Virus record (IMG/VR): IMGVR_UViG_3300020147_000065
Location: 1 to 64,000 of that record
Direction: 5' to 3' (one strand)
DNA length: 64,000 nucleotides
Position 1 is the stretch's first letter; every line of letters starts with the position of its first letter. Of this stretch, positions 83 to 59,514 are shown one piece after another. Under the pieces are notes generated by a model that was not told the origin of the DNA, made no database searches, and saw only the letters and a program-made list of their open reading frames with translations. Position numbers and translations under genes: made by a program.

Positions 83-111
83 TTGACACGATAGGTAAAA
101 AACGATAAAAT
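83..111 (+). promoter_or_regulatory. sigma70-type promoter (near-leaderless) for ruvB-like gene
   Basis: TTGACA 83-88, 17 nt spacer, TAAAAT 106-111; ATG at 122. Confidence 0.8.
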
Positions 112-1357: not shown

Positions 1358-1483
1358 ATGATTGGATTGATACTCGCTTTTATTGGTTTTGTTTGGTGCC
1401 TGTCGTTGAATAAAGACTTCGTAGTTCCTACACCAGTTGGCGTAGTTATTGGATTCATTCTATTGTTACTGGGGTTACAATGA
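1358..1483 (+). CDS. small membrane protein (41 aa, missed by ORF track)
   Basis: AAGGA RBS; MIGLILAFIGFVWCLSLNKDFVVPTPVGVVIGFILLLLGLQ; ATGA overlap with next gene. Confidence 0.6.
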   Translation: MIGLILAFIGFVWCLSLNKDFVVPTPVGVVIGFILLLLGLQ

Positions 1484-3809: not shown

Positions 3810-3825
3810 TAGTCTGCCCCCCCCC

Positions 3826-3861: not shown

Positions 3862-4416
3862 ATGAGCGAACAAAAGACCACTAACTTTAAGGCCGGTGAG
3901 GACGTAATTGTTTACAGCGATTTCCTCAACCAAAGGCGACCACTGGGAAAAGCCATGCTCGACGAGCGTTTAGGCGATTACCCCACAAAGAACCAATGGG
4001 CACTCGCACAGTGGCGAGTGCGATTCTATGACGAACGCGGCAACTTGGAAACAGACGACGATAAAAAGCCTGTCTTTTCTACCATGCCGATTCTTGAAGT
4101 TGGCAAGCCAAACGAGAATCGCCCACAATCTGAGGACTATTCGCAATATGGAGCGAAGCCCGAAGCTGACGAAACTGGCGAAGTTGTTGAAAAGAAAAAG
4201 CCGGAGAAGAAAGCAGCCCCATCAACCGGCAGTCGTGGACGTGGACGCCCCGAAGTCCCAATGAATGAAATCAAGGCCCGTAACATTGTGCGACAACTCA
4301 AAGATAAAAAGCGCGATGGGCGACTTGATGAAGCTGTGGACTACCTTTTAAATGAGTGTCCAAAGGCCGCAAAATTCGTAGAAAAATACCTTGAATACCT
4401 TGACGGCAGCTTCTAA
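3862..4416 (+). CDS. hypothetical protein with AT-hook-like RGRGRP motif
   Basis: start moved to ATG 3862 behind the promoter; Lys/Glu-rich linker. Confidence 0.65.
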   Translation: MSEQKTTNFKAGEDVIVYSDFLNQRRPLGKAMLDERLGDYPTKNQWALAQWRVRFYDERGNLETDDDKKPVFSTMPILEVGKPNENRPQSEDYSQYGAKPEADETGEVVEKKKPEKKAAPSTGSRGRGRPEVPMNEIKARNIVRQLKDKKRDGRLDEAVDYLLNECPKAAKFVEKYLEYLDGSF

Positions 4417-4428
4417 TCTTGGTATAAT
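4400..4428 (+). promoter_or_regulatory. sigma70-type promoter for rIIA
   Basis: TTGACG-17-TATAAT; AGGAG RBS before ATG 4465. Confidence 0.85.
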
Positions 4429-4464: not shown

Positions 4465-6636
4465 ATGAGTATTCCCATCGCTGAAAAAGAGATTGTTGTG
4501 CTGTCCAACATGGACTTTGAGAGTGCCGAAATGGGCATTGCAGAAGAAGATGTGCCGACTATCATCGCTATTCTGCGCGACAAACTTTATCGCAACAAAG
4601 AACGTGCAATCGTGCGCGAATATAGCACCAATGCGCGGGACGCAATGATTGAGTGCGATAATGGTAGTAATCCGTTTGAGGTTTGGCTACCCACGCGGTT
4701 AGACCCTGTTTTCAAAGTGCGCGACTATGGCACAGGTTTATCGGAAACTGCAATTAACCAAATCTTTCGTTTCTTGGGTAAGTCCACGAAGCGCGACAGC
4801 AATTTGGTAAACGGTCAGCTTGGCATCGGTGCGAAGTCCGGTCTTGCTCTTGCGAACCAGTTTAACGTAACGTCCTATGTGGATGGACAAGTGACCTTTT
4901 ACGTTGTTTTGAATGACCCATCGCGCAAAGGTCGCATTGATAAAATTGCAGGGCCATTACCTACTGATGAACCTAACGGCGTTTTAATCGAAGTGCCTAT
5001 CCCTGCTGCCAGCATCGAAAAAATGCACCAAGAGGCTTCGTTTGTTTACAAGTATTTCGATTTGAAACCAACGATTCACGGTTTAGACGAAAGCAAATAT
5101 CCTTTAACCCGTCCTAAACCAGTGTTGGAAGGTAAGACTTGGCGAATTGTGGGCGGCGAATCGGTTGCCATTATGGGCAACGTGGCCTATCCTATCGGTT
5201 CTGACTTCATCGTGCCGGAAGTTCACGGTGAAGAAGGCGAAAAGTGGAAGCAGTTTTTGAGTGCCGGTGTTGAGATTGACTTTCCTATCGGCTCAATCGA
5301 ATTTGCCCCATCCCGCGAAGAACTGAGCTACAACGAACATACTATCAATGTTTTAATTGATACAATCAAGTCGGCTATCAAGGAAGCTGCCGACCTGATT
5401 ACTGACAAACTGAAAAACGCGCCTAACCGTTGGGAAGCCATGTGTTTAGTTTCAGCGTTGCAAGGTGAGTTAGGTGAGTTTGGCCGTAATCTCAAATCTG
5501 TTATTGGTAAAATCCAGTGGCAAGGAAAAGAGGTAGGCAATACAATTCACGTTGGCTATAATCACAATGCCGCAACTTCGGGTTGGATGGTGCGCGAGTA
5601 TCAGAACAACACCTATACAAACCGTTTCTCTCACACCGGCAATCCTTCAAGCCTTTATGCTTCGCATAAAACACTCTTGATTGAGATTGACGATAAGAAC
5701 GGCAAAGCGCAACCGGCGAAGATGAAGTATTACTGTGAGCAGAACGGCTATGAGCGTGTATATTTGCTCTCTTTCACTTCGGCAACTGCGCGGCAACTGT
5801 TTTATAAGTCGCACTTAGAAGATATTCCTGTAATGATGCAAACGGCTTTGCCGAAAGCGCCGCCATCAAGCAGTGGTTCGGGTGGAAGCGGCCCCGTAAA
5901 CCCAAAGCATAGCTTACAGGTATTCACTTTCAACTATTCGACAAGTAGCACCGCAAGCGAATCATGGGAGCAGGAAACCGTTGATGCTGTGAACGGTAAA
6001 GGCTACTACGTTGTTATTGACCGTTTCAACGTGCAAAAGGAACACGGCACCGAACTTTACCCTAAAGACTACCTTGATACTTTGGAGTTCGCACACAAGT
6101 TGCTCGGCTTCAACTGGAAAAAGGAAACCATTATTGGTGTCAAGCGCAGTTTCTTTGACAATAAGAAACTGGGTAAGAACTGGAAACCGTTGTTTGAATA
6201 TCTGCGCGATGCTGCTAAAAAGGTGCTGGAAAAGCAAAAGCAGTTTCAGGTGGCTATTGACTACTCAGAATATATGACGCATAGGGCACAGACGTTTGAG
6301 TGCTTTCAAAAAGAGTTAGTCAATCTACAATATCCTGATGAAGCGATGGGCACTTATTTGGCCGCAGCACAAGAGGCGTATTTCCGCCACGATAAAGTGA
6401 CGAAGGGCAAGTTAAACGAGGCCAAAACCCTGTTTGATAAAATCGGCTACCCGCTTCACTACACTTACACGCCGACTTATTTGTTTTCTGACGGTGCCGA
6501 AAAGATTACAGAAAGTTACCCGCTTATGGGCGTAGTCGGAACGGGTTATTACTCGCATGGCTACGCTCAAAACGTGGAGAAGTTTATCCACTATATCAAC
6601 TTGTGCGATGCCGAAACGGTGTCCAAACGTCTGTAA
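4465..6636 (+). CDS. rIIA: rIIA-like protein with N-terminal GHKL (Hsp90-like) ATPase domain
   Basis: LYRNKERAIVREYSTNARDA, VRDYGTGLS, GQLGIGAKS motifs; 723 aa; directly followed by rIIB. Confidence 0.85.
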   Translation: MSIPIAEKEIVVLSNMDFESAEMGIAEEDVPTIIAILRDKLYRNKERAIVREYSTNARDAMIECDNGSNPFEVWLPTRLDPVFKVRDYGTGLSETAINQIFRFLGKSTKRDSNLVNGQLGIGAKSGLALANQFNVTSYVDGQVTFYVVLNDPSRKGRIDKIAGPLPTDEPNGVLIEVPIPAASIEKMHQEASFVYKYFDLKPTIHGLDESKYPLTRPKPVLEGKTWRIVGGESVAIMGNVAYPIGSDFIVPEVHGEEGEKWKQFLSAGVEIDFPIGSIEFAPSREELSYNEHTINVLIDTIKSAIKEAADLITDKLKNAPNRWEAMCLVSALQGELGEFGRNLKSVIGKIQWQGKEVGNTIHVGYNHNAATSGWMVREYQNNTYTNRFSHTGNPSSLYASHKTLLIEIDDKNGKAQPAKMKYYCEQNGYERVYLLSFTSATARQLFYKSHLEDIPVMMQTALPKAPPSSSGSGGSGPVNPKHSLQVFTFNYSTSSTASESWEQETVDAVNGKGYYVVIDRFNVQKEHGTELYPKDYLDTLEFAHKLLGFNWKKETIIGVKRSFFDNKKLGKNWKPLFEYLRDAAKKVLEKQKQFQVAIDYSEYMTHRAQTFECFQKELVNLQYPDEAMGTYLAAAQEAYFRHDKVTKGKLNEAKTLFDKIGYPLHYTYTPTYLFSDGAEKITESYPLMGVVGTGYYSHGYAQNVEKFIHYINLCDAETVSKRL

Positions 6637-6644
6637 TTAGTAGA

Positions 6645-6682
6645 GGGCTACCCTTGACAGGGTAGCCCGAAACTGGTATAAT
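6645..6682 (+). promoter_or_regulatory. sigma70 promoter with the -35 hexamer as loop of a 9-bp inverted repeat
   Basis: GGGCTACCC-TTGACA-GGGTAGCCC, TATAAT at 6677-6682 (17 nt spacer). Confidence 0.85.
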
Positions 6683-6700: not shown

Positions 6701-7579
6701 ATGGAACAATTACCTTGCATCTATTCACCGGATAAATCCGCAACCGTGTTTTTGGGCAGCAAAGCTGTAACGGTTGTGGCCGGACAACCGCACTTCCGCG
6801 AAGTGCAGGACGCGATTATCGCGCAGGACTGGGAAGCTGTAGCCCGTTTGGTGGACGTTATCACTTCGATTAAAGCCTATTTAGTTAAAGACGGCGATTT
6901 CGAGATTTCCCGCGAAGAAATAAAATACCGCAACGAACCTGTTAAGGGTGTTATCGCTGACCGTATTTTGAGCTTCATGGAAAAGGGTTATCCTTCGGCT
7001 CCGCTTATCGAATTTCTGCGTAATTTAATGAGCAATCCGTCTTTCAACTCGCGTAATCAGCTTTACACGTTCTTAGAGCGTTGGAATCTGCCTATTACAC
7101 CAAACGGCAACTTCTTGGCTTACAAAGCCGTTCGCAATGACTACATGAGCATTGCTTCTGACCGCAATACCGGCGAACACGTTGATAACTCGATTGGTCG
7201 CGTCGTAGTTATGGACAGGGCAAAGATTGACGATAACCCGAAAAATCACTGCTCTGCCGGTTTACACGCCGGAGCCTTACAATACGTCCGTTGGTATGGT
7301 GGCATTTCTCACGGTGGAGCGATTGAAGGCGGAAACCGCGCAATCATCGTAGAGATTAACCCTGCTGACGTGGTTAGCGTTCCTAACGACCATGACTGCC
7401 AAAAGATGCGCGTCTGCAAGTATAAGGTGATTGGTGACTACATTGGCGAATTGCCTACCGATTACACCGACGCTGCCGTTTATGACGGTTATGAGGACGG
7501 TGACGAGGGCGACAGCTACGACGAGGACGATTATTGTCCTGATTGTGGCGAACCTTACGAAATCTGCAACTGTGACTAA
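6701..7579 (+). CDS. rIIB: rIIB-like protein
   Basis: PITPNGNFLAYKAVRNDY, CSAGLHAG, INPADVVSVPND, KMRVCKYKV are typical rIIB motifs. Confidence 0.9.
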   Translation: MEQLPCIYSPDKSATVFLGSKAVTVVAGQPHFREVQDAIIAQDWEAVARLVDVITSIKAYLVKDGDFEISREEIKYRNEPVKGVIADRILSFMEKGYPSAPLIEFLRNLMSNPSFNSRNQLYTFLERWNLPITPNGNFLAYKAVRNDYMSIASDRNTGEHVDNSIGRVVVMDRAKIDDNPKNHCSAGLHAGALQYVRWYGGISHGGAIEGGNRAIIVEINPADVVSVPNDHDCQKMRVCKYKVIGDYIGELPTDYTDAAVYDGYEDGDEGDSYDEDDYCPDCGEPYEICNCD

Positions 7580-7625: not shown

Positions 7626-7778
7626 CTGCGCACGAGGGGGGGGGCAGACAGGAAAATGCAAACACACCACAATACTCTAAATAAACTACCCCACATTACT
7701 TTTTCAACTATTTAGCCCCAAAACATTGGAAGATGACGTTGCCGGGTAAACCGGACAAAAATAAAAAAGAGAAATACG

Positions 7779-9855: not shown

Positions 9856-9884
9856 TTGACAGATACATCTACATGCAGTATAAT
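9856..9884 (+). promoter_or_regulatory. consensus sigma70 promoter
   Basis: TTGACA-17-TATAAT. Confidence 0.85.
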
Positions 9885-9914: not shown

Positions 9915-10100
9915 ATGTTCGCTGTAGACTTACATCTGGACGAGGAGGGTTTCCCTTATGTCGGTACTTTTGATCTTGACCCCGATCTCATTTACTGGCA
10001 CGAGGTTCTCCCGAACGATTTCATGCGCGTTCGGCTTTCAGGAGCCGAACGTACCCTCGTGTTAAAGCATGATTCTTTATGGAAGAGATATTTTAAATGA
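9915..10100 (+). CDS. hypothetical protein
   Basis: AAGGA RBS downstream of promoter. Confidence 0.6.
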   Translation: MFAVDLHLDEEGFPYVGTFDLDPDLIYWHEVLPNDFMRVRLSGAERTLVLKHDSLWKRYFK

Positions 10101-10791
10101 AAGGGAGGGTGATTACCCGTGGATAGCAGAGTAAGACGAGCCTACGTATTGTACCATGACGGACAATTCAGGATGAACTGCATGTTGAACCTCGGATTAG
10201 GTAAGCACAAGCAGTTGACTCCTCAACTCTTGTGGAAGAAGGCATGGCATGTCGCAAGATTATCTGGTTAATGGAACGTAACCACCGGTTATCTCGTATG
10301 AGTAGCCGGTGGTTTCACTTTACGGCAAAATCAGGGGGTAATAGCCCTGTGCGCGACAGCAAGGGTCCACTATGGTTACCTTTATGGTATTAGAGGTACC
10401 GGGCAGAGCTTTGGAGAGACAAAGTTACAAATTCGAAATGATCCTGTGAACTCCCTGGAATCCAGCGGAGTTGTTTTTGTCTGATTTTTTGGGTACTTGG
10501 GAAAGAGTTGTGTGTTCTGTTATAGAATATGTAGGTTATGATATGATTTACCCCGTGGATAGCCCAAAAATTGATGATTCCAGAGCAAAAATCGAATGAA
10601 TTGACTATAATACCATGAATAGAAAGAGAAAAAGTAGGGTCAAATCATTGGAAGAAGGCGTTAGCTGGTAAATTTTGTCAAAAATAGGAAGTTAGAATAC
10701 GAATTTTTTAATAGTGTGTAGTGAGTTGAGTGGAAAATTGTAAAAATGGGGTGTCTCTCTCGCTTCTATGCCTATTAAATCCCATATTCTC

Positions 10792-10829
10792 ACCTTTGAA
10801 ACCCAAAATCTAACCTTTGAAACCCAAAA
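10792..10829 (+). repeat. 17-nt direct repeat ACCTTTGAAACCCAAAA x2, 21-nt period
   Basis: copies at 10792-10808 and 10813-10829. Confidence 0.85.
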
Positions 10830-10838
10830 CAAACCAAA

Positions 10839-10970
10839 ATGTCATTCTTCAAAAAGCCCAAAACCGAAGGTATTTTCATCGCAATCTGCCTATTATCCCT
10901 ACTTTTACCCGGATTACTCTTTCTTCTTTACTTATTTTACTCTATTCTACTTGGAAAACGTACTCTATAA
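10839..10970 (+). CDS. hydrophobic microprotein 1 (43 aa)
   Basis: MSFFKKPKTEGIFIAICLLSLLLPGLLFLLYLFYSILLGKRTL; no clear RBS. Confidence 0.5.
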   Translation: MSFFKKPKTEGIFIAICLLSLLLPGLLFLLYLFYSILLGKRTL

Positions 10971-10977
10971 TAAAACA

Positions 10978-11061
10978 ATGGCAACTATGGTAATAGTTGC
11001 TGGAATGATCTATGGGGTCCTCCACACTTTCGTGGAACCACCCGTCCCGAAGAGAGTGTAA
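10978..11061 (+). CDS. hydrophobic microprotein 2 (27 aa)
   Basis: MATMVIVAGMIYGVLHTFVEPPVPKRV; starts 7 nt after previous stop. Confidence 0.45.
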   Translation: MATMVIVAGMIYGVLHTFVEPPVPKRV

Positions 11062-11067
11062 CCACCT

Positions 11068-11139
11068 ATGTTTCTTAATATAGTACTATTGGTAGTATTC
11101 TTTGTTCTCTTTAAAATTAGCAAACCACGGGGGAGGTAA
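11068..11139 (+). CDS. hydrophobic microprotein 3 (23 aa)
   Basis: MFLNIVLLVVFFVLFKISKPRGR. Confidence 0.5.
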   Translation: MFLNIVLLVVFFVLFKISKPRGR

Positions 11140-11142
11140 TTC

Positions 11143-11238
11143 ATGAGGTTAGCCAAGGCCTTCATCACGCGTTGGCCTTTCATGTTCATGTGTCTCGTTG
11201 CTTTAGCATCCTACTTACTGAGTAAATTATTTCAATGA
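11143..11238 (+). CDS. hydrophobic microprotein 4 (31 aa)
   Basis: strong GGAGG RBS; MRLAKAFITRWPFMFMCLVALASYLLSKLFQ. Confidence 0.6.
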   Translation: MRLAKAFITRWPFMFMCLVALASYLLSKLFQ

Positions 11239-11348
11239 TAAAACCACTACCACCAGGAATATTACTCCTCAGATGGTTAATCTTAGTATTCTTCTTCCTA
11301 ACCTTATTAGTACTGATAGAGGAAGATGTTCTTAAATTATTCAGCTAA
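11235..11348 (+). CDS. hydrophobic microprotein 5 (37 aa)
   Basis: ATGA overlap; MIKPLPPGILLLRWLILVFFFLTLLVLIEEDVLKLFS. Confidence 0.55.
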   Translation: MIKPLPPGILLLRWLILVFFFLTLLVLIEEDVLKLFS

Positions 11349-11360
11349 CCACGGGTAAAA

Positions 11361-11441
11361 ATGAAATTCATCATTGGAATCATCATATTAGCTTTTATTA
11401 ACTTTTACTTTGGTGATGATAAACGGCCAGACCTGAAGTAA
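11361..11441 (+). CDS. hydrophobic microprotein 6 (26 aa)
   Basis: MKFIIGIIILAFINFYFGDDKRPDLK. Confidence 0.5.
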   Translation: MKFIIGIIILAFINFYFGDDKRPDLK

Positions 11442-11516
11442 TTTCTTTTAGCTGCACGACGGTCTTTTGGGACCGTCTCCAGCTTTCCTTTGTCTGTAAG
11501 GTTGGTGGTGATTCCT

Positions 11517-11708
11517 ATGATCTTCGGATATGTGGTCTGCGACAACTGCCATAAGAAGGAGCACATTAGCAACACTAACGGATGGTTAATTCTAAAGCCT
11601 GAGCTAAATGACCGACTTGAGCAGATTACGCCGCAAAAAGACTTTTGTGGTTACTCCTGCCTTGGGGCCTATGCCCGTAAAAAGACGGAGGAAGTACGTC
11701 AAGATTGA
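11517..11708 (+). CDS. small CxxC...FCGxxC zinc-binding protein
   Basis: CDNC and DFCGYSC; start set at ATG 11517. Confidence 0.6.
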   Translation: MIFGYVVCDNCHKKEHISNTNGWLILKPELNDRLEQITPQKDFCGYSCLGAYARKKTEEVRQD

Positions 11709-11711
11709 CAT

Positions 11712-12059
11712 ATGTATCAAATTAATTCCCAATCGAACGAAGGACTATGTACACTCGAATTTAGATTCCGTGTGCTTCCGGCCAAACCAAAGAATCCTAT
11801 GGGTTCTAATTGTTTACTCGGTATTGAATGCCATGTACTCGATGTTAGCGACAGTCAATACACAGGTTACCCCGTGGGTGGGTTATCCCTCATTGGTGGC
11901 CAGGGTTGGGCTGACGATTACGACAAGGCGAGACAAGATGCCCTCGCCCAGGCTCTCGAACTCATTGATCCGAAGTACCGTAGCAAACAAATCCATGCTG
12001 ACGCGTGGACAACCTACGTCAAAGAATACGGTTTATCTTCAGGAACAAGAAAGGTATGA
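11712..12059 (+). CDS. hypothetical protein
   Basis: 115 aa ORF in coupled run. Confidence 0.6.
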   Translation: MYQINSQSNEGLCTLEFRFRVLPAKPKNPMGSNCLLGIECHVLDVSDSQYTGYPVGGLSLIGGQGWADDYDKARQDALAQALELIDPKYRSKQIHADAWTTYVKEYGLSSGTRKV

Positions 12060-13066: not shown

Positions 13067-13810
13067 CTAAACGTCTTTCCATGTTCGAAATTCCATAATA
13101 GACTGAATCGTGCTTCGTGCCACATTGAAGCGGTGGGCTAATTTACCGTAAGAAACAGTTCCTTTAAGGCCGCGAATTACCTGCACATCTTCGCGCGAGA
13201 GAATAGCTGCCGGTTTCTTTTCATTAAGAGTCTTACGAATAGCTTCTTTCTGCTGTTCTGATACTGCTCGACCCCGTCGCTGCTCTGACCATAGTTTCCT
13301 GGTTTCTGGGCTTGGTTTTCTTCCAAGATTATTAAGTCTCATTTGCTCAATATGCTGCGGTGAAAGTTTCCGACCTCTTAGAGGACTTGGGCGACCTTTC
13401 TGGGTCATACTTCTCTTTAAATTAGAGTCGGGTGTGGTGAAATTCAGAGCACCATATCTCTCTAACATAGTTCGATTTCTTTGGGCTATAGATTCGGGTG
13501 ATCTTTTTACTCCTAATGCAGTTGCTACAACTTCAACACAGATATTCAATTCAGGTTTAAGTTCGTTAACGTAAAATTGTTCTCTGTTAATTAAATCGTT
13601 TGTTTCTTCAAGTATAGAAAACTCAAACGCTTGTTCTCCGTACTTATTCCAAGAATTTTGTAATTTCTTGTTACAGTGGTTACCTTTTTTCAACGCATTG
13701 ATGTGTTGTTTCCATCGAATTTCTATTTGAATAGAACTACCAATGTAGAACTTACCATTGACCTTGTTCGTTATCTGGTATATTCCAGATTTGTGGATTT
13801 TATTACCCAT
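13067..13810 (-). CDS. free-standing GIY-YIG homing endonuclease with NUMOD3 repeats
   Basis: SGIYQITNKVNGKFYIGSS, HCNKKLQNSWNKYG, E..E..Y...LKPELN; NUMOD3-like SPQHIEQMR / SPETRKLWSE; AGGAG RBS before ATG 13810. Confidence 0.92.
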   Translation of the reverse strand: MGNKIHKSGIYQITNKVNGKFYIGSSIQIEIRWKQHINALKKGNHCNKKLQNSWNKYGEQAFEFSILEETNDLINREQFYVNELKPELNICVEVVATALGVKRSPESIAQRNRTMLERYGALNFTTPDSNLKRSMTQKGRPSPLRGRKLSPQHIEQMRLNNLGRKPSPETRKLWSEQRRGRAVSEQQKEAIRKTLNEKKPAAILSREDVQVIRGLKGTVSYGKLAHRFNVARSTIQSIMEFRTWKDV

Positions 13811-14795
13811 GACTTCTTCTCCTAATTCTAAACCAACATTTGGTATAATGTGCACCACATTCGGTGGTGCTCCATACGTACATCTTCAGTTGGCGATCCG
13901 CCGAAAATTTTTCGGAAAGGTCCCTATGGCGATTATAGATGATTGTTCCTATCAGAGTAAAATTTTGATGAAGCTCTGCGAACATTACGATGCCTATTTT
14001 CTTTCCGGTAACGAACGCCTCGGCCACCTGCAAGGCGACCTTCAGGCTCATCGTCTGGGCCTCGAATGGGCAAAATATCTCGGTTTGGAATACCTCGTAA
14101 AAATTTCCAGACGTTGTGTGCCCCTTTTTGACTGGACTGGTGCCTTTATAAAAACCGTTGAGGATACCGGACACCTTCCAACTTATGCGGGTACTGACAA
14201 TTATTTTATGTACCCACTACGCTCCGAATGCTGGGCCATGAATGTAGAGGAATGGTATCCAATTAAAGATGAAATTTTAGGTGTAGCAAAAGAAGCGGCT
14301 GAATATACTCTTCATCGTCATGCGGTCAGGCTCGGTAACATTGGCCCTGATTGGGGCCTCTGTGCTGAAAATCGTAGAGTGCGTAAAGAGGGAGTTCTGT
14401 GGCACGAAAATACTACTCTGGAAGAATACGCTGCCGCAGCAAATCAATTTGGTTTAAAATATACCGCAGAAGATTTCGATAATGTAAATGGTGGACTCGG
14501 ACTGGGAAATGAGAAATGGCGTCATTCGGTACCGGGAAGTGTGCTTCCGTGTCCAGGAAAAGAAACTCGCCCTGAACAAACTATTCGAAAATTAGAACAA
14601 AACAGAGTAGGACAGAATATTTCCGTACCAAAGGCTAAAAAATCTAAGCGAATTGAGACATGGCCACCAGTTAAAGAAAGGATTATCATTCCCAAATCAA
14701 CTCGTAGAGGGGAAGAAGCGCCTATTCCACAACCGCGTCCATCTACTGGTGCGACGGTCAAACCAATTAATACCGACTATATTCACGGTGACTAA
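13809..14795 (+). CDS. GT-A fold glycosyltransferase-like protein with low-complexity C-terminus
   Basis: N-terminal beta strand FGIMCTT, MAIIDDCS, GHLQGDL...GL, LVKISRR pattern. Confidence 0.55.
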   Translation: MTSSPNSKPTFGIMCTTFGGAPYVHLQLAIRRKFFGKVPMAIIDDCSYQSKILMKLCEHYDAYFLSGNERLGHLQGDLQAHRLGLEWAKYLGLEYLVKISRRCVPLFDWTGAFIKTVEDTGHLPTYAGTDNYFMYPLRSECWAMNVEEWYPIKDEILGVAKEAAEYTLHRHAVRLGNIGPDWGLCAENRRVRKEGVLWHENTTLEEYAAAANQFGLKYTAEDFDNVNGGLGLGNEKWRHSVPGSVLPCPGKETRPEQTIRKLEQNRVGQNISVPKAKKSKRIETWPPVKERIIIPKSTRRGEEAPIPQPRPSTGATVKPINTDYIHGD

Positions 14796-59419: not shown

Positions 59420-59479
59420 AAAGGGCCAGGAGATTTTCTTCTCCTGGCCCTTGACTTTTAGTGTGTATGTTGGTATAAT
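59420..59479 (+). promoter_or_regulatory. terminator hairpin abutting a sigma70 promoter
   Basis: AAGGGCCAGGAG / CTCCTGGCCCTT stem overlapping TTGACT 59451; TATAAT 59474. Confidence 0.8.
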
Positions 59480-59514
59480 TTACTGTAGCTTTATAAATAA
59501 GGAGTCCATTTCAA

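What the first reader, a model, noticed from the sequence alone, without database searches (positions are those of the whole stretch)
10839..11441. Array of six translationally coupled hydrophobic microproteins hidden below the ORF cutoff
Seen: six consecutive 23-43 aa ATG-initiated ORFs (10839-10970, 10978-11061, 11068-11139, 11143-11238, 11235-11348, 11361-11441). They are separated by 3-12 nt or an ATGA overlap, and each has a single TM-like segment with charged ends. The 97-aa ORF 10768..11061 in the track masks the first two. Inference: a battery of membrane micro-effectors such as superinfection exclusion factors or inhibitors of host membrane complexes or membrane-based defence sensors.
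Basis: partly seen in the sequence, partly recalled or inferred. Interest (0 to 1): 0.68.

Follow-up and report, generated by a model that had tools for sequence, protein, structure and literature searches.

The report
Six tandem phage membrane micro-genes
An uncultured 221-kb phage carries six back-to-back unannotated mini-genes (23-43 codons), each apparently coding for one membrane-spanning helix; the layout is far from chance, but they have no relatives anywhere, so their expression and role are untested.

Summary
Six ATG-initiated ORFs of 43, 27, 23, 31, 37 and 26 aa tile 10839-11441 on the + strand. The spacers are 7, 6, 3 and 12 nt, plus one ATGA overlap. This is not a composition artefact. 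No chain longer than 3 occurs elsewhere in the window or in about 127 kb of other phage DNA. None of 5000 dinucleotide shuffles reaches 5 in a row. None of 3000 shuffles gives more than 2 hydrophobic ORFs, against 6 observed. Every ORF has T-rich second codon positions, and charged residues sit at the ends (combined p = 1e-5). AlphaFold models ORF1 and ORF5 as single long helices. The array lies in the early region of a singleton rIIA/rIIB phage, with a perfect sigma-70 promoter about 1 kb upstream.

The weak points are real. Codon usage is intermediate between real and spurious ORFs. ORF1 and ORF2 lack a Shine-Dalgarno site. No gene caller called any of them, and no homologue or related phage exists, so conservation cannot be tested.

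Best reading: a translationally coupled cassette of six unrelated single-pass membrane microproteins acting on the host envelope early in infection.

The parts
9856..9884 (+). Perfect sigma-70 promoter (TTGACA-17-TATAAT), the nearest strong promoter upstream. It is the likely start of the transcript that carries the array (inferred).
   Evidence: No + strand terminator-like site lies between it and 10839. The same promoter type precedes rIIA, rIIB and other early genes.
10781..10838 (+). A/C-rich leader with no SD before ORF1. It contains 2.3 copies of a 21-nt tandem repeat (10781-10829).
   Evidence: It is mostly unpaired in the predicted fold. SD pairing energy is +0.4 kcal/mol.
10839..10970 (+). 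Micro-ORF1, 43 aa: basic N-terminus, 29-residue uncharged core, GKRTL tail. It ends in tandem TAA TAA.
   Evidence: AlphaFold gives a helix over residues 7-42 with pLDDT 83. No SD. No homologue among 1.84 billion representatives.
10978..11061 (+). Micro-ORF2, 27 aa. It starts 7 nt after the ORF1 stop and has no SD, so it would depend on coupling.
10981..11000 (+). 8-bp palindromic hairpin immediately after the ORF2 start codon. It could restrict independent initiation at ORF2 (inferred).
11068..11139 (+). Micro-ORF3, 23 aa: 15-residue hydrophobic core and KISKPRGR tail. It has an SD-like GAGAG.
   Evidence: SD pairing energy -5.8 kcal/mol.
11143..11238 (+). Micro-ORF4, 31 aa, preceded by a strong SD (GGGGAGG at 11128-11134).
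   Evidence: SD pairing energy -12.7 kcal/mol, against a median of -6.4 for the phage's long genes.
11235..11348 (+). Micro-ORF5, 37 aa. Its start overlaps the ORF4 stop (ATGA).
   Evidence: AlphaFold gives a helix over residues 7-36 with pLDDT 92.
11361..11441 (+). Micro-ORF6, 26 aa: hydrophobic N-terminal helix and charged GDDKRPDLK tail.
   Evidence: Marginal SD at -3.9 kcal/mol.
11457..11476 (+). 8-bp G+C-rich hairpin after ORF6, without a clean U-tract. It may be a weak terminator or a stabiliser, ahead of the next gene (63-aa CxxC protein, 11517-11708).
   Evidence: The terminator scan did not flag it.
10768..11061 (+). Mechanical 97-aa ORF, judged spurious. Its middle is the out-of-frame reading of ORF1 (S/Y/F-rich) and its C-terminus is ORF2.
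   Evidence: It is absent from the protein collection and has no Pfam hit.

Best explanation
The array is a polycistronic cassette inside an early transcription unit of an uncultured, probably complete, 221-kb phage that carries rIIA and rIIB. It encodes six mutually unrelated microproteins of 23-43 aa, each one membrane-spanning helix with short charged ends. Shown: the ORFs, their tiling, the TM-like architecture, the SD sites at ORF3 and ORF4, the ATGA overlap, and the early-region setting. Inferred: ribosomes load at the unstructured A/C-rich leader (ORF1) and at the SD sites of ORF3 and ORF4, and reach ORF2, ORF5 and ORF6 mainly by termination-reinitiation across spacers of -4 to 12 nt. 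Also inferred: the peptides insert into the host cytoplasmic membrane soon after infection and each binds or perturbs a different host membrane component, in the way that small membrane proteins such as MgrB, AcrZ or phage PhiNM1 Gp11 act on larger partners. The confidence given is for 'real, translated membrane microprotein genes'. The modulator role on its own I put at about 0.35.
For: The chain of six tightly spaced ATG ORFs is unique in the window and in 191 kb of phage DNA. It is never reached in 5000 shuffles. There are six hydrophobic ORFs against at most 2 in 3000 composition-preserving shuffles. T at codon position 2 is 0.46-0.63 in all six and is the highest of the three positions each time. 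Charged residues are pushed to the ends, Fisher p = 1e-5. AlphaFold models ORF1 and ORF5 as single helices with pLDDT 83 and 92. SD pairing is -12.7 kcal/mol at ORF4 and -5.8 at ORF3. ATGA overlaps are documented as coupling devices (PMC6728339). ORF1 ends in a tandem TAA TAA. TAA is the commonest genuine stop in this phage, 31 of 58 long ORFs. The sequence is identical in two assemblies. The RNA does not fold unusually well, z = -1.24, and has no Rfam hit, so it does not look like a structured RNA. The context is early: consensus sigma-70 promoters, rIIA/rIIB, and PARP, Macro and HD genes upstream. A called 41-aa two-TM gene with its own early promoter sits at 1358-1483. Small single-TM regulators and a phage early small membrane protein with host targets are precedents (PMC12648545; PMC11237401).
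Against: Codon usage is not gene-like. The total log-odds is about 0. The synonymous log-odds is -0.039, against 0.077 +/- 0.046 for real genes and -0.095 +/- 0.044 for spurious ORFs. ORF1 and ORF2 have no SD, although 76% of the phage's long genes do. There is no strong promoter directly upstream of ORF1. Neither JGI nor ENA gene calling reports any of the six. There is no homologue and no related genome, so no evidence of purifying selection. Hydrophobic ORFs arise easily in AT-rich DNA (PMC11188072). The function is wholly inferred.
Confidence: 0.62

Rival explanations
1. Young proto-genes. The ORFs are real open frames, perhaps weakly translated, that arose recently in a T-rich spacer of the early operon and have no settled function.
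For: They are orphans with no homologues anywhere. Codon usage is intermediate. ORF1 and ORF2 lack an SD. Hydrophobic microproteins are the expected product of AT-rich intergenic DNA (PMC11188072). The local GC of 0.34-0.41 is below that of the flanks.
Against: Composition alone never gives more than 2 hydrophobic ORFs or chains of 5 or more. Tiling with ATG within 0-4 codons of each preceding stop, a consensus SD at ORF4, and charge segregation all imply selection on the reading frames.
Confidence: 0.17
2. Remnant of one multi-pass (about 6 TM, about 200 aa) membrane-protein gene, broken by three TAA stops and two frameshifts.
For: ORF2-3-4 share one frame and are separated only by single TAA codons. 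ORF5-6 likewise share a frame with each other and with ORF1. That gives six hydrophobic segments in series.
Against: Every break is followed within 0-4 codons by an ATG, and ORF4 has a consensus SD. Decay does not create these. No piece matches any family. The sequence is identical in two assemblies. The read-through translation with X at the stops was not searched.
Confidence: 0.05
3. Membrane-damaging toxic peptides of the type I toxin kind, held in check by an antisense RNA.
For: Size and shape (under 60 aa, one TM, short charged ends) fit type I toxins (PMC12648545). There is a 9/12 promoter-like site on the minus strand at 11235-11208, and a minus-strand terminator-like hairpin at 11000-10981.
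Against: Promoter-like matches in the region are fewer than in shuffles, 4 against 8.5. There is no paralogy among the six and no long, strongly folded 5' UTR (z = -1.24). The cistrons are tightly coupled, not separate loci each with its own RNA. The setting is a lytic-phage early operon.
Confidence: 0.05
4. Non-coding spacer whose ORFs are chance products.
For: The ORFs are uncalled by gene finders. The region is T- and C-rich. Generic coding scores are poor.
Against: No shuffle out of 5000, and none out of 3000, reaches the observed values. The array is unique in 191 kb of phage DNA. Second-position T bias is present in all six.
Confidence: 0.03

Closest known systems
[quoted passage not shown]
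   Same: They are 50 aa or shorter, have one TM helix with short charged ends, and are routinely missed by annotation. They act by binding a larger membrane partner.
   Different: Those are single chromosomal genes, often next to or co-regulated with their target. Here six unrelated peptides sit in a row in a phage, with no sequence similarity and no membrane partner encoded nearby.
Phage early small membrane proteins (PhiNM1 Gp11, PMC11237401; from my own knowledge also T4 Imm, Sp and Ac, and lambda Kil)
   Same: They are early-expressed phage products that sit in the host membrane and alter host envelope functions or exclude other phages. T4 Imm and Sp appear in the T4 annotation seen.
   Different: The known ones are mostly 50-100 aa and are single genes. 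No homology was found. An array of six peptides under 45 aa was not seen in the 50 kb of T4 or the other phage loci scanned.
Type I toxin-antitoxin toxins (Hok, TisB, IbsC, Ldr; PMC12648545)
   Same: They have a length of 19-50 aa, a single TM helix, and short polar ends.
   Different: Those have an antisense RNA, a structured leader, and separate, often paralogous loci. None of these is evident here.
Operons of several tiny peptides: psbEFLJ-type photosystem subunit operons, S. aureus psm-alpha, and leaderless multi-peptide bacteriocins such as aureocin A70 (from my own knowledge)
   Same: Several different or related peptides of 20-45 aa are encoded head-to-tail in one transcript.
   Different: No Pfam match to any photosystem or cytochrome small subunit. 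PSMs and bacteriocins are amphipathic, paralogous, and accompanied by export or immunity genes. Here there is no paralogy and no transporter nearby.
Overlapping or closely spaced gene pairs coupled by termination-reinitiation (PMC6728339)
   Same: There is an ATGA overlap (ORF4/ORF5) and spacers of 3-12 nt. Some downstream cistrons lack an SD.
   Different: That mechanism was documented for ordinary-sized gene pairs. A run of five consecutive junctions between micro-cistrons is untested.

Membership tests
Small single-pass membrane proteins (SMPs, 50 aa or shorter) | Length of 50 aa or less | tested here: met
   The six are 23-43 aa.
Small single-pass membrane proteins (SMPs, 50 aa or shorter) | One hydrophobic helix long enough to span a bilayer, with flanking polar or charged residues | tested here: met
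   Uncharged runs are 15-29 residues, and the best 15-residue Kyte-Doolittle window scores 2.1-3.1. ORF1 and ORF5 are modelled as single helices. The cores of ORF3 and ORF5 (15 residues) are at the short limit. No dedicated TM predictor was available.
Small single-pass membrane proteins (SMPs, 50 aa or shorter) | The ORF is actually translated and the product is in the membrane | not testable with these tools
   This needs Ribo-seq, tagging or fractionation. Indirect signals are mixed.
Small single-pass membrane proteins (SMPs, 50 aa or shorter) | Conservation under purifying selection | tested here: inconclusive
   No relatives exist to compare. The nearest rIIB is 47-50% identical, and its loci lack the array. 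Flanking genes are singletons.
Type I toxin-antitoxin | Antisense or overlapping antitoxin RNA with its own promoter and terminator | tested here: inconclusive
   Only a 9/12 promoter-like site and a palindromic hairpin lie on the minus strand. Such matches are at or below chance level.
Type I toxin-antitoxin | Each toxin has its own structured leader, and loci are often paralogous repeats | tested here: not met
   The cistrons are 0-12 nt apart. The fold z-score is -1.24. No pairwise similarity goes beyond composition.
Photosystem / cytochrome b6f small subunits (PsbT, PsbI, PetG and others) | Match to the family HMM | tested here: not met
   No Pfam hit to any such family at E <= 10. The PsbT-like and PsbI-like tails I recalled from memory were not confirmed.
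Holin / lysis cassette | A position next to an endolysin or spanin in a late lysis module | tested here: not met
   The neighbours have no lysin domains. The setting is an early region with sigma-70 promoters and rII genes.
Leaderless multi-peptide bacteriocins / PSM operons | Paralogous amphipathic peptides with export or immunity genes nearby | tested here: not met
   There is no paralogy. The cores are uniformly hydrophobic. No transporter lies in the called neighbourhood.
Translationally coupled operon (termination-reinitiation) | Stop/start overlap or very short spacer between co-directed cistrons | tested here: met
   There is an ATGA overlap and spacers of 3, 6, 7 and 12 nt. The mechanism is described in PMC6728339.
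Translationally coupled operon (termination-reinitiation) | Downstream translation depends on upstream translation | not testable with these tools
   This needs reporter fusions with upstream premature stops.

The most novel reading that the evidence does not exclude
The six peptides are made in fixed proportions by coupling and work as a set. One possibility is that they co-assemble into a hetero-oligomeric membrane complex or pore that is built entirely from microproteins. The other is that they form a multi-target battery in which each helix disables a different host membrane sensor or defence effector. A further twist is not excluded: ORF2-3-4 and ORF5-6 are each in one frame, separated only by single TAA codons. 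Occasional read-through would therefore yield 2- and 3-TM fusion products from the same DNA.
Probability: 0.12. Interest if true: 0.75.

Novelty: new variant of a known kind. Interest (0 to 1): 0.45.

Why it matters
Phage early regions are the main reservoir of host-takeover and anti-defence factors, and proteins under 50 aa are systematically left out of annotation. Here 600 bases that two pipelines left blank would hold six genes. If they are expressed, this would be a compact source of six new transmembrane helices that a phage uses against a bacterial envelope. It would also be a natural test case for serial translational coupling between micro-cistrons, and an argument for scanning phage 'gaps' for chains of micro-ORFs instead of single ones. 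If they are not expressed, the locus still marks how far ORF tiling can depart from chance without conservation data.

Tried and rejected
- **Near and distant DNA search of the region against 50,697 phage records:** no match.
- **tblastn of ORF1 and ORF4 against phages:** nothing for ORF1, and only E >= 5 noise for ORF4.
- **Pfam and PHROGs on all six peptides:** no meaningful hit. The best was phrog_23825, of unknown function, at E = 0.007 over 12 residues. This rejects my lead, recalled from memory, that the ORF2 and ORF6 tails resemble PsbT and PsbI.
- **Exhaustive phmmer of ORF1 against 1.84 billion representatives:** 0 hits.
- **Exact look-up of the six peptides and the 97-aa ORF:** none is in the collection.
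- **Flanking genes as anchors:** the 115-aa, 142-aa, rIIA and 63-aa proteins, searched in viral and metagenome contigs and in the protein database, found only the source contig.
- **Nearest rIIB relatives (47-50% identity):** their loci have no comparable chain. A local-alignment z-score of 4 between ORF1 and a 68-aa two-TM protein of the closest relative was not confirmed by BLASTP, and I treat it as compositional.
- **Size limits of the tools:** The search for related loci refuses queries under 48 aa and the search for homologous proteins refuses queries under 40 aa. The five shorter peptides therefore could not be searched that way.
- **Paralogy among the six:** none.
- **tRNA and Rfam:** none.
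- **Structured-RNA reading:** the fold z-score is -1.24.
- **Complex prediction on ORF4 + ORF5:** no verdict. This is not evidence either way.
- **Walk of 10 kb upstream of the window:** no further array.
- **Sample identifiers in the literature:** none found.

Full report
**Source and setting.** The window is the first 64 kb of IMGVR_UViG_3300020147_000065, which is JGI Ga0196976_1000013, 221,108 bp. An ENA assembly of 221,049 bp is a circular permutation of it. It is identical over 20.1 kb apart from one poly-C length difference near window position 71. The genome is therefore probably complete, and the array sequence (10101-11720 is an exact match) is not an assembly artefact.

The phage encodes rIIA (4465-6636) and rIIB (6701-7579), collagen-like tail fibres, a DnaB-type helicase and thymidylate synthase. 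The 10 kb before the window start carry PARP, Macro, HD, ligase and dCMP-deaminase genes. Consensus sigma-70 promoters, often with an extended -10, precede the first gene, rIIA, rIIB and the 61-aa gene at 9915. Most genes have GGAG-type SD sites. So 1-13 kb is an early region transcribed by host polymerase.

| ORF | Coordinates | Length |
|---|---|---|
| ORF1 | 10839-10970 | 43 aa |
| ORF2 | 10978-11061 | 27 aa |
| ORF3 | 11068-11139 | 23 aa |
| ORF4 | 11143-11238 | 31 aa |
| ORF5 | 11235-11348 | 37 aa |
| ORF6 | 11361-11441 | 26 aa |

- The spacers are 7, 6 and 3 nt, then an ATGA overlap, then 12 nt.
- The 97-aa ORF 10768-11061 reads ORF1 out of frame, giving an S/Y/F-rich stretch, and reads ORF2 in frame. 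Neither public annotation calls it or any of the six. Both leave 10100-11517 empty.

**Is it chance?** No.
- A dynamic-programming scan looked for chains of ATG ORFs of 20-60 codons with gaps of -4 to 12 nt. It finds this chain of six as the longest in the window on either strand, and the next best is three.
- The same scan was run over 191 kb: the window, three loci of rIIB relatives, 40 kb of a Microcystis phage and 50 kb of T4. It finds no other chain above three and none with a hydrophobic member.
- Dinucleotide-preserving shuffles of 10701-11500 gave a longest chain of 0-3 in 4999 of 5000 trials, and 4 once.
- Shuffles of the array itself produced 0, 1 or 2 hydrophobic ATG ORFs in 2631, 357 and 12 of 3000 trials. 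Six are observed. The T-rich composition therefore does not explain it.
- T is the most frequent base at codon position 2 in all six (0.46-0.63), against 0.11-0.41 at position 1 and 0.08-0.33 at position 3.
- Permuting each peptide's own residues shows that the charged residues lie nearer the ends than expected (Fisher p = 1e-5).
- AlphaFold, without an alignment, gives one continuous helix for ORF1 (residues 7-42, pLDDT 83) and for ORF5 (7-36, pLDDT 92).

**Expression signals.**
- ORF4 has a consensus SD (GGGGAGG, -12.7 kcal/mol) and ORF3 a fair one (-5.8). The median for the phage's long genes is -6.4.
- ORF6 is marginal (-3.9). ORF5 overlaps the ORF4 stop. ORF1 and ORF2 have none.
- ORF1 is preceded by an A/C-rich leader that is predicted to be mostly unpaired and contains a 21-nt tandem repeat. 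ORF1 ends in TAA TAA.
- ORF2 starts 7 nt later and is immediately followed by an 8-bp hairpin.
- ATGA overlaps and very short spacers are the classic setting for termination-reinitiation (PMC6728339).
- No strong promoter lies just upstream of ORF1. There is a lone perfect TATAAT at 10606-10611 without a -35, seen by reading the sequence.
- The nearest strong promoter is at 9856-9884, with no terminator-like site in between. I infer that the array is an internal part of that early transcript.
- A G+C-rich hairpin (11457-11476) follows ORF6 but lacks a U-tract.

**Evidence against, or missing.**
- A codon log-odds model trained on the phage's 38 long ORFs scores the six at -0.22 to +0.22. Spurious small ORFs score -0.12 +/- 0.16 and real 30-codon chunks 0.30 +/- 0.16.
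- A synonymous-only version gives -0.039. That is 2.5 sd below real genes and 1.3 sd above spurious ones.
- The called 41-aa two-TM gene at 1358-1483 also scores low (0.075). The measure is therefore weak for hydrophobic mini-genes, but it gives no support.
- No homologue was found by any route.
- The phage is a singleton. The flanking proteins have no relatives, and the nearest rIIB is 47-50% identical.
- The six peptides are not detectably related to one another.

**Alternatives.**
- *Broken multi-pass gene.* The frame pattern (ORF1 | ORF2-3-4 | ORF5-6, with only single TAA codons inside the blocks) suggests it. However, every break is followed by an ATG within 0-4 codons, and ORF4 has a consensus SD. 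TAA is also the phage's commonest true stop.
- *Type I toxin-like module.* It lacks a convincing antisense unit, structured leaders and paralogy.
- *Structured RNA.* Nothing supports it.
- *Young proto-genes.* This is the main rival, and only conservation or expression data can separate it from the best explanation.

**Function.** Nothing here tests it.
- By analogy with small membrane regulators (PMC12648545) and with a phage early small membrane protein that binds MurG and DivIC (PMC11237401), the most likely mode is this: each helix inserts into the host inner membrane and binds or perturbs a host membrane protein early in infection.
- Six unrelated sequences point to several targets, not to one homo-oligomer.
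- The closest relative carries two adjacent small two-TM proteins of 58 and 68 aa just downstream of rIIB. Tandem small membrane proteins in this neighbourhood are therefore not unique to this phage, although no homology was shown.
- The ORF4-ORF5 complex job returned no verdict.

**Verdict.** The coding and membrane reading is probable, at about 0.6. This is a new arrangement of a known kind of gene, and it is of moderate interest until expression or conservation is shown.

Noticed in passing
whole window; e.g. 10116(-), 10552(-), 11125(+), 11349(+), 11871(-): A dispersed motif, roughly GCYAWCCACGGGg. Its core CCACGGG occurs 41 times in 64 kb (23 on +, 18 on -), and 8 more times in the 10 kb upstream. 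The 15-mer with up to 3 mismatches gives 26 hits against 1.8 expected. Copies lie in all three codon phases and in both orientations relative to genes, so the signal is at the DNA level. Five copies cluster round the array, and two of them supply the 'AACCACGGG' before ORF4 and ORF6. The role is unknown; a binding site, a recombination signal or a Chi-like signal are guesses.
   Followed up: partly
window 10101-10838: About 740 nt with no called gene lie between the 61-aa gene and the array, and the stretch is G-rich. It holds a 50-aa GTG ORF (10119-10271) behind a strong SD (AGGGAGGG) and a hairpin AACCACCGG...CCGGTGGTT at about 10281-10315. There is no Rfam hit at E <= 1. The codon score of the 50-aa ORF is about 0.
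   Followed up: partly
window 1358-1483: A 41-aa ORF with two hydrophobic segments, an SD and its own near-consensus promoter (1304-1332). The public annotations call it. It is a second very small membrane protein in the same early region.
   Followed up: partly
L008 2172-2348 and 2352-2558: The closest rIIB relative (47% identity) has two adjacent small two-TM proteins of 58 and 68 aa, 3 nt apart, downstream of rIIB. They are weakly similar to each other (z = 3.5). The 58-aa one is not called.
   Followed up: partly
window 10978-11238 and 11235-11441: ORF2, ORF3 and ORF4 are in one reading frame, separated only by single TAA codons plus 2 and 1 sense codons. ORF5 and ORF6 likewise share a frame, separated by one TAA plus 4 sense codons. 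Read-through would fuse them into 3-TM and 2-TM products.
   Followed up: no
window 83-111, 1304-1332, 4400-4428, 6654-6682, 9856-9884, ~59460-59490: Perfect or near-perfect TTGACA-17-TATAAT promoters, several with TG-extended -10 elements, precede early genes. The phage evidently relies on host sigma-70 polymerase for this region.
   Followed up: partly
L013 1-10000 (10 kb before the window start on the permuted ENA contig): The stretch encodes PARP catalytic and regulatory domains, a Macro domain, an HD_4 domain, DNA ligase, a GIY-YIG endonuclease and a DUF2828/DUF7788 protein. This is an ADP-ribosylation-flavoured early or anti-defence neighbourhood. A 630-nt gap with no called gene lies at 5143-5775.
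   Followed up: no
window 13067-13858 (-): A GIY-YIG homing-endonuclease-like gene lies on the opposite strand, convergent with the operon that contains the array.
   Followed up: no
window ~56-71, ~3816-3825, ~7635-7643: Homopolymer runs are present (C11, C9, G9). The first differs by one base between the JGI and ENA assemblies.
   Followed up: partly
window 10781-10829: 2.3 copies of a 21-nt tandem repeat (CCCAAAATCTAACCTTTGAAA) form the leader immediately before ORF1.
   Followed up: no
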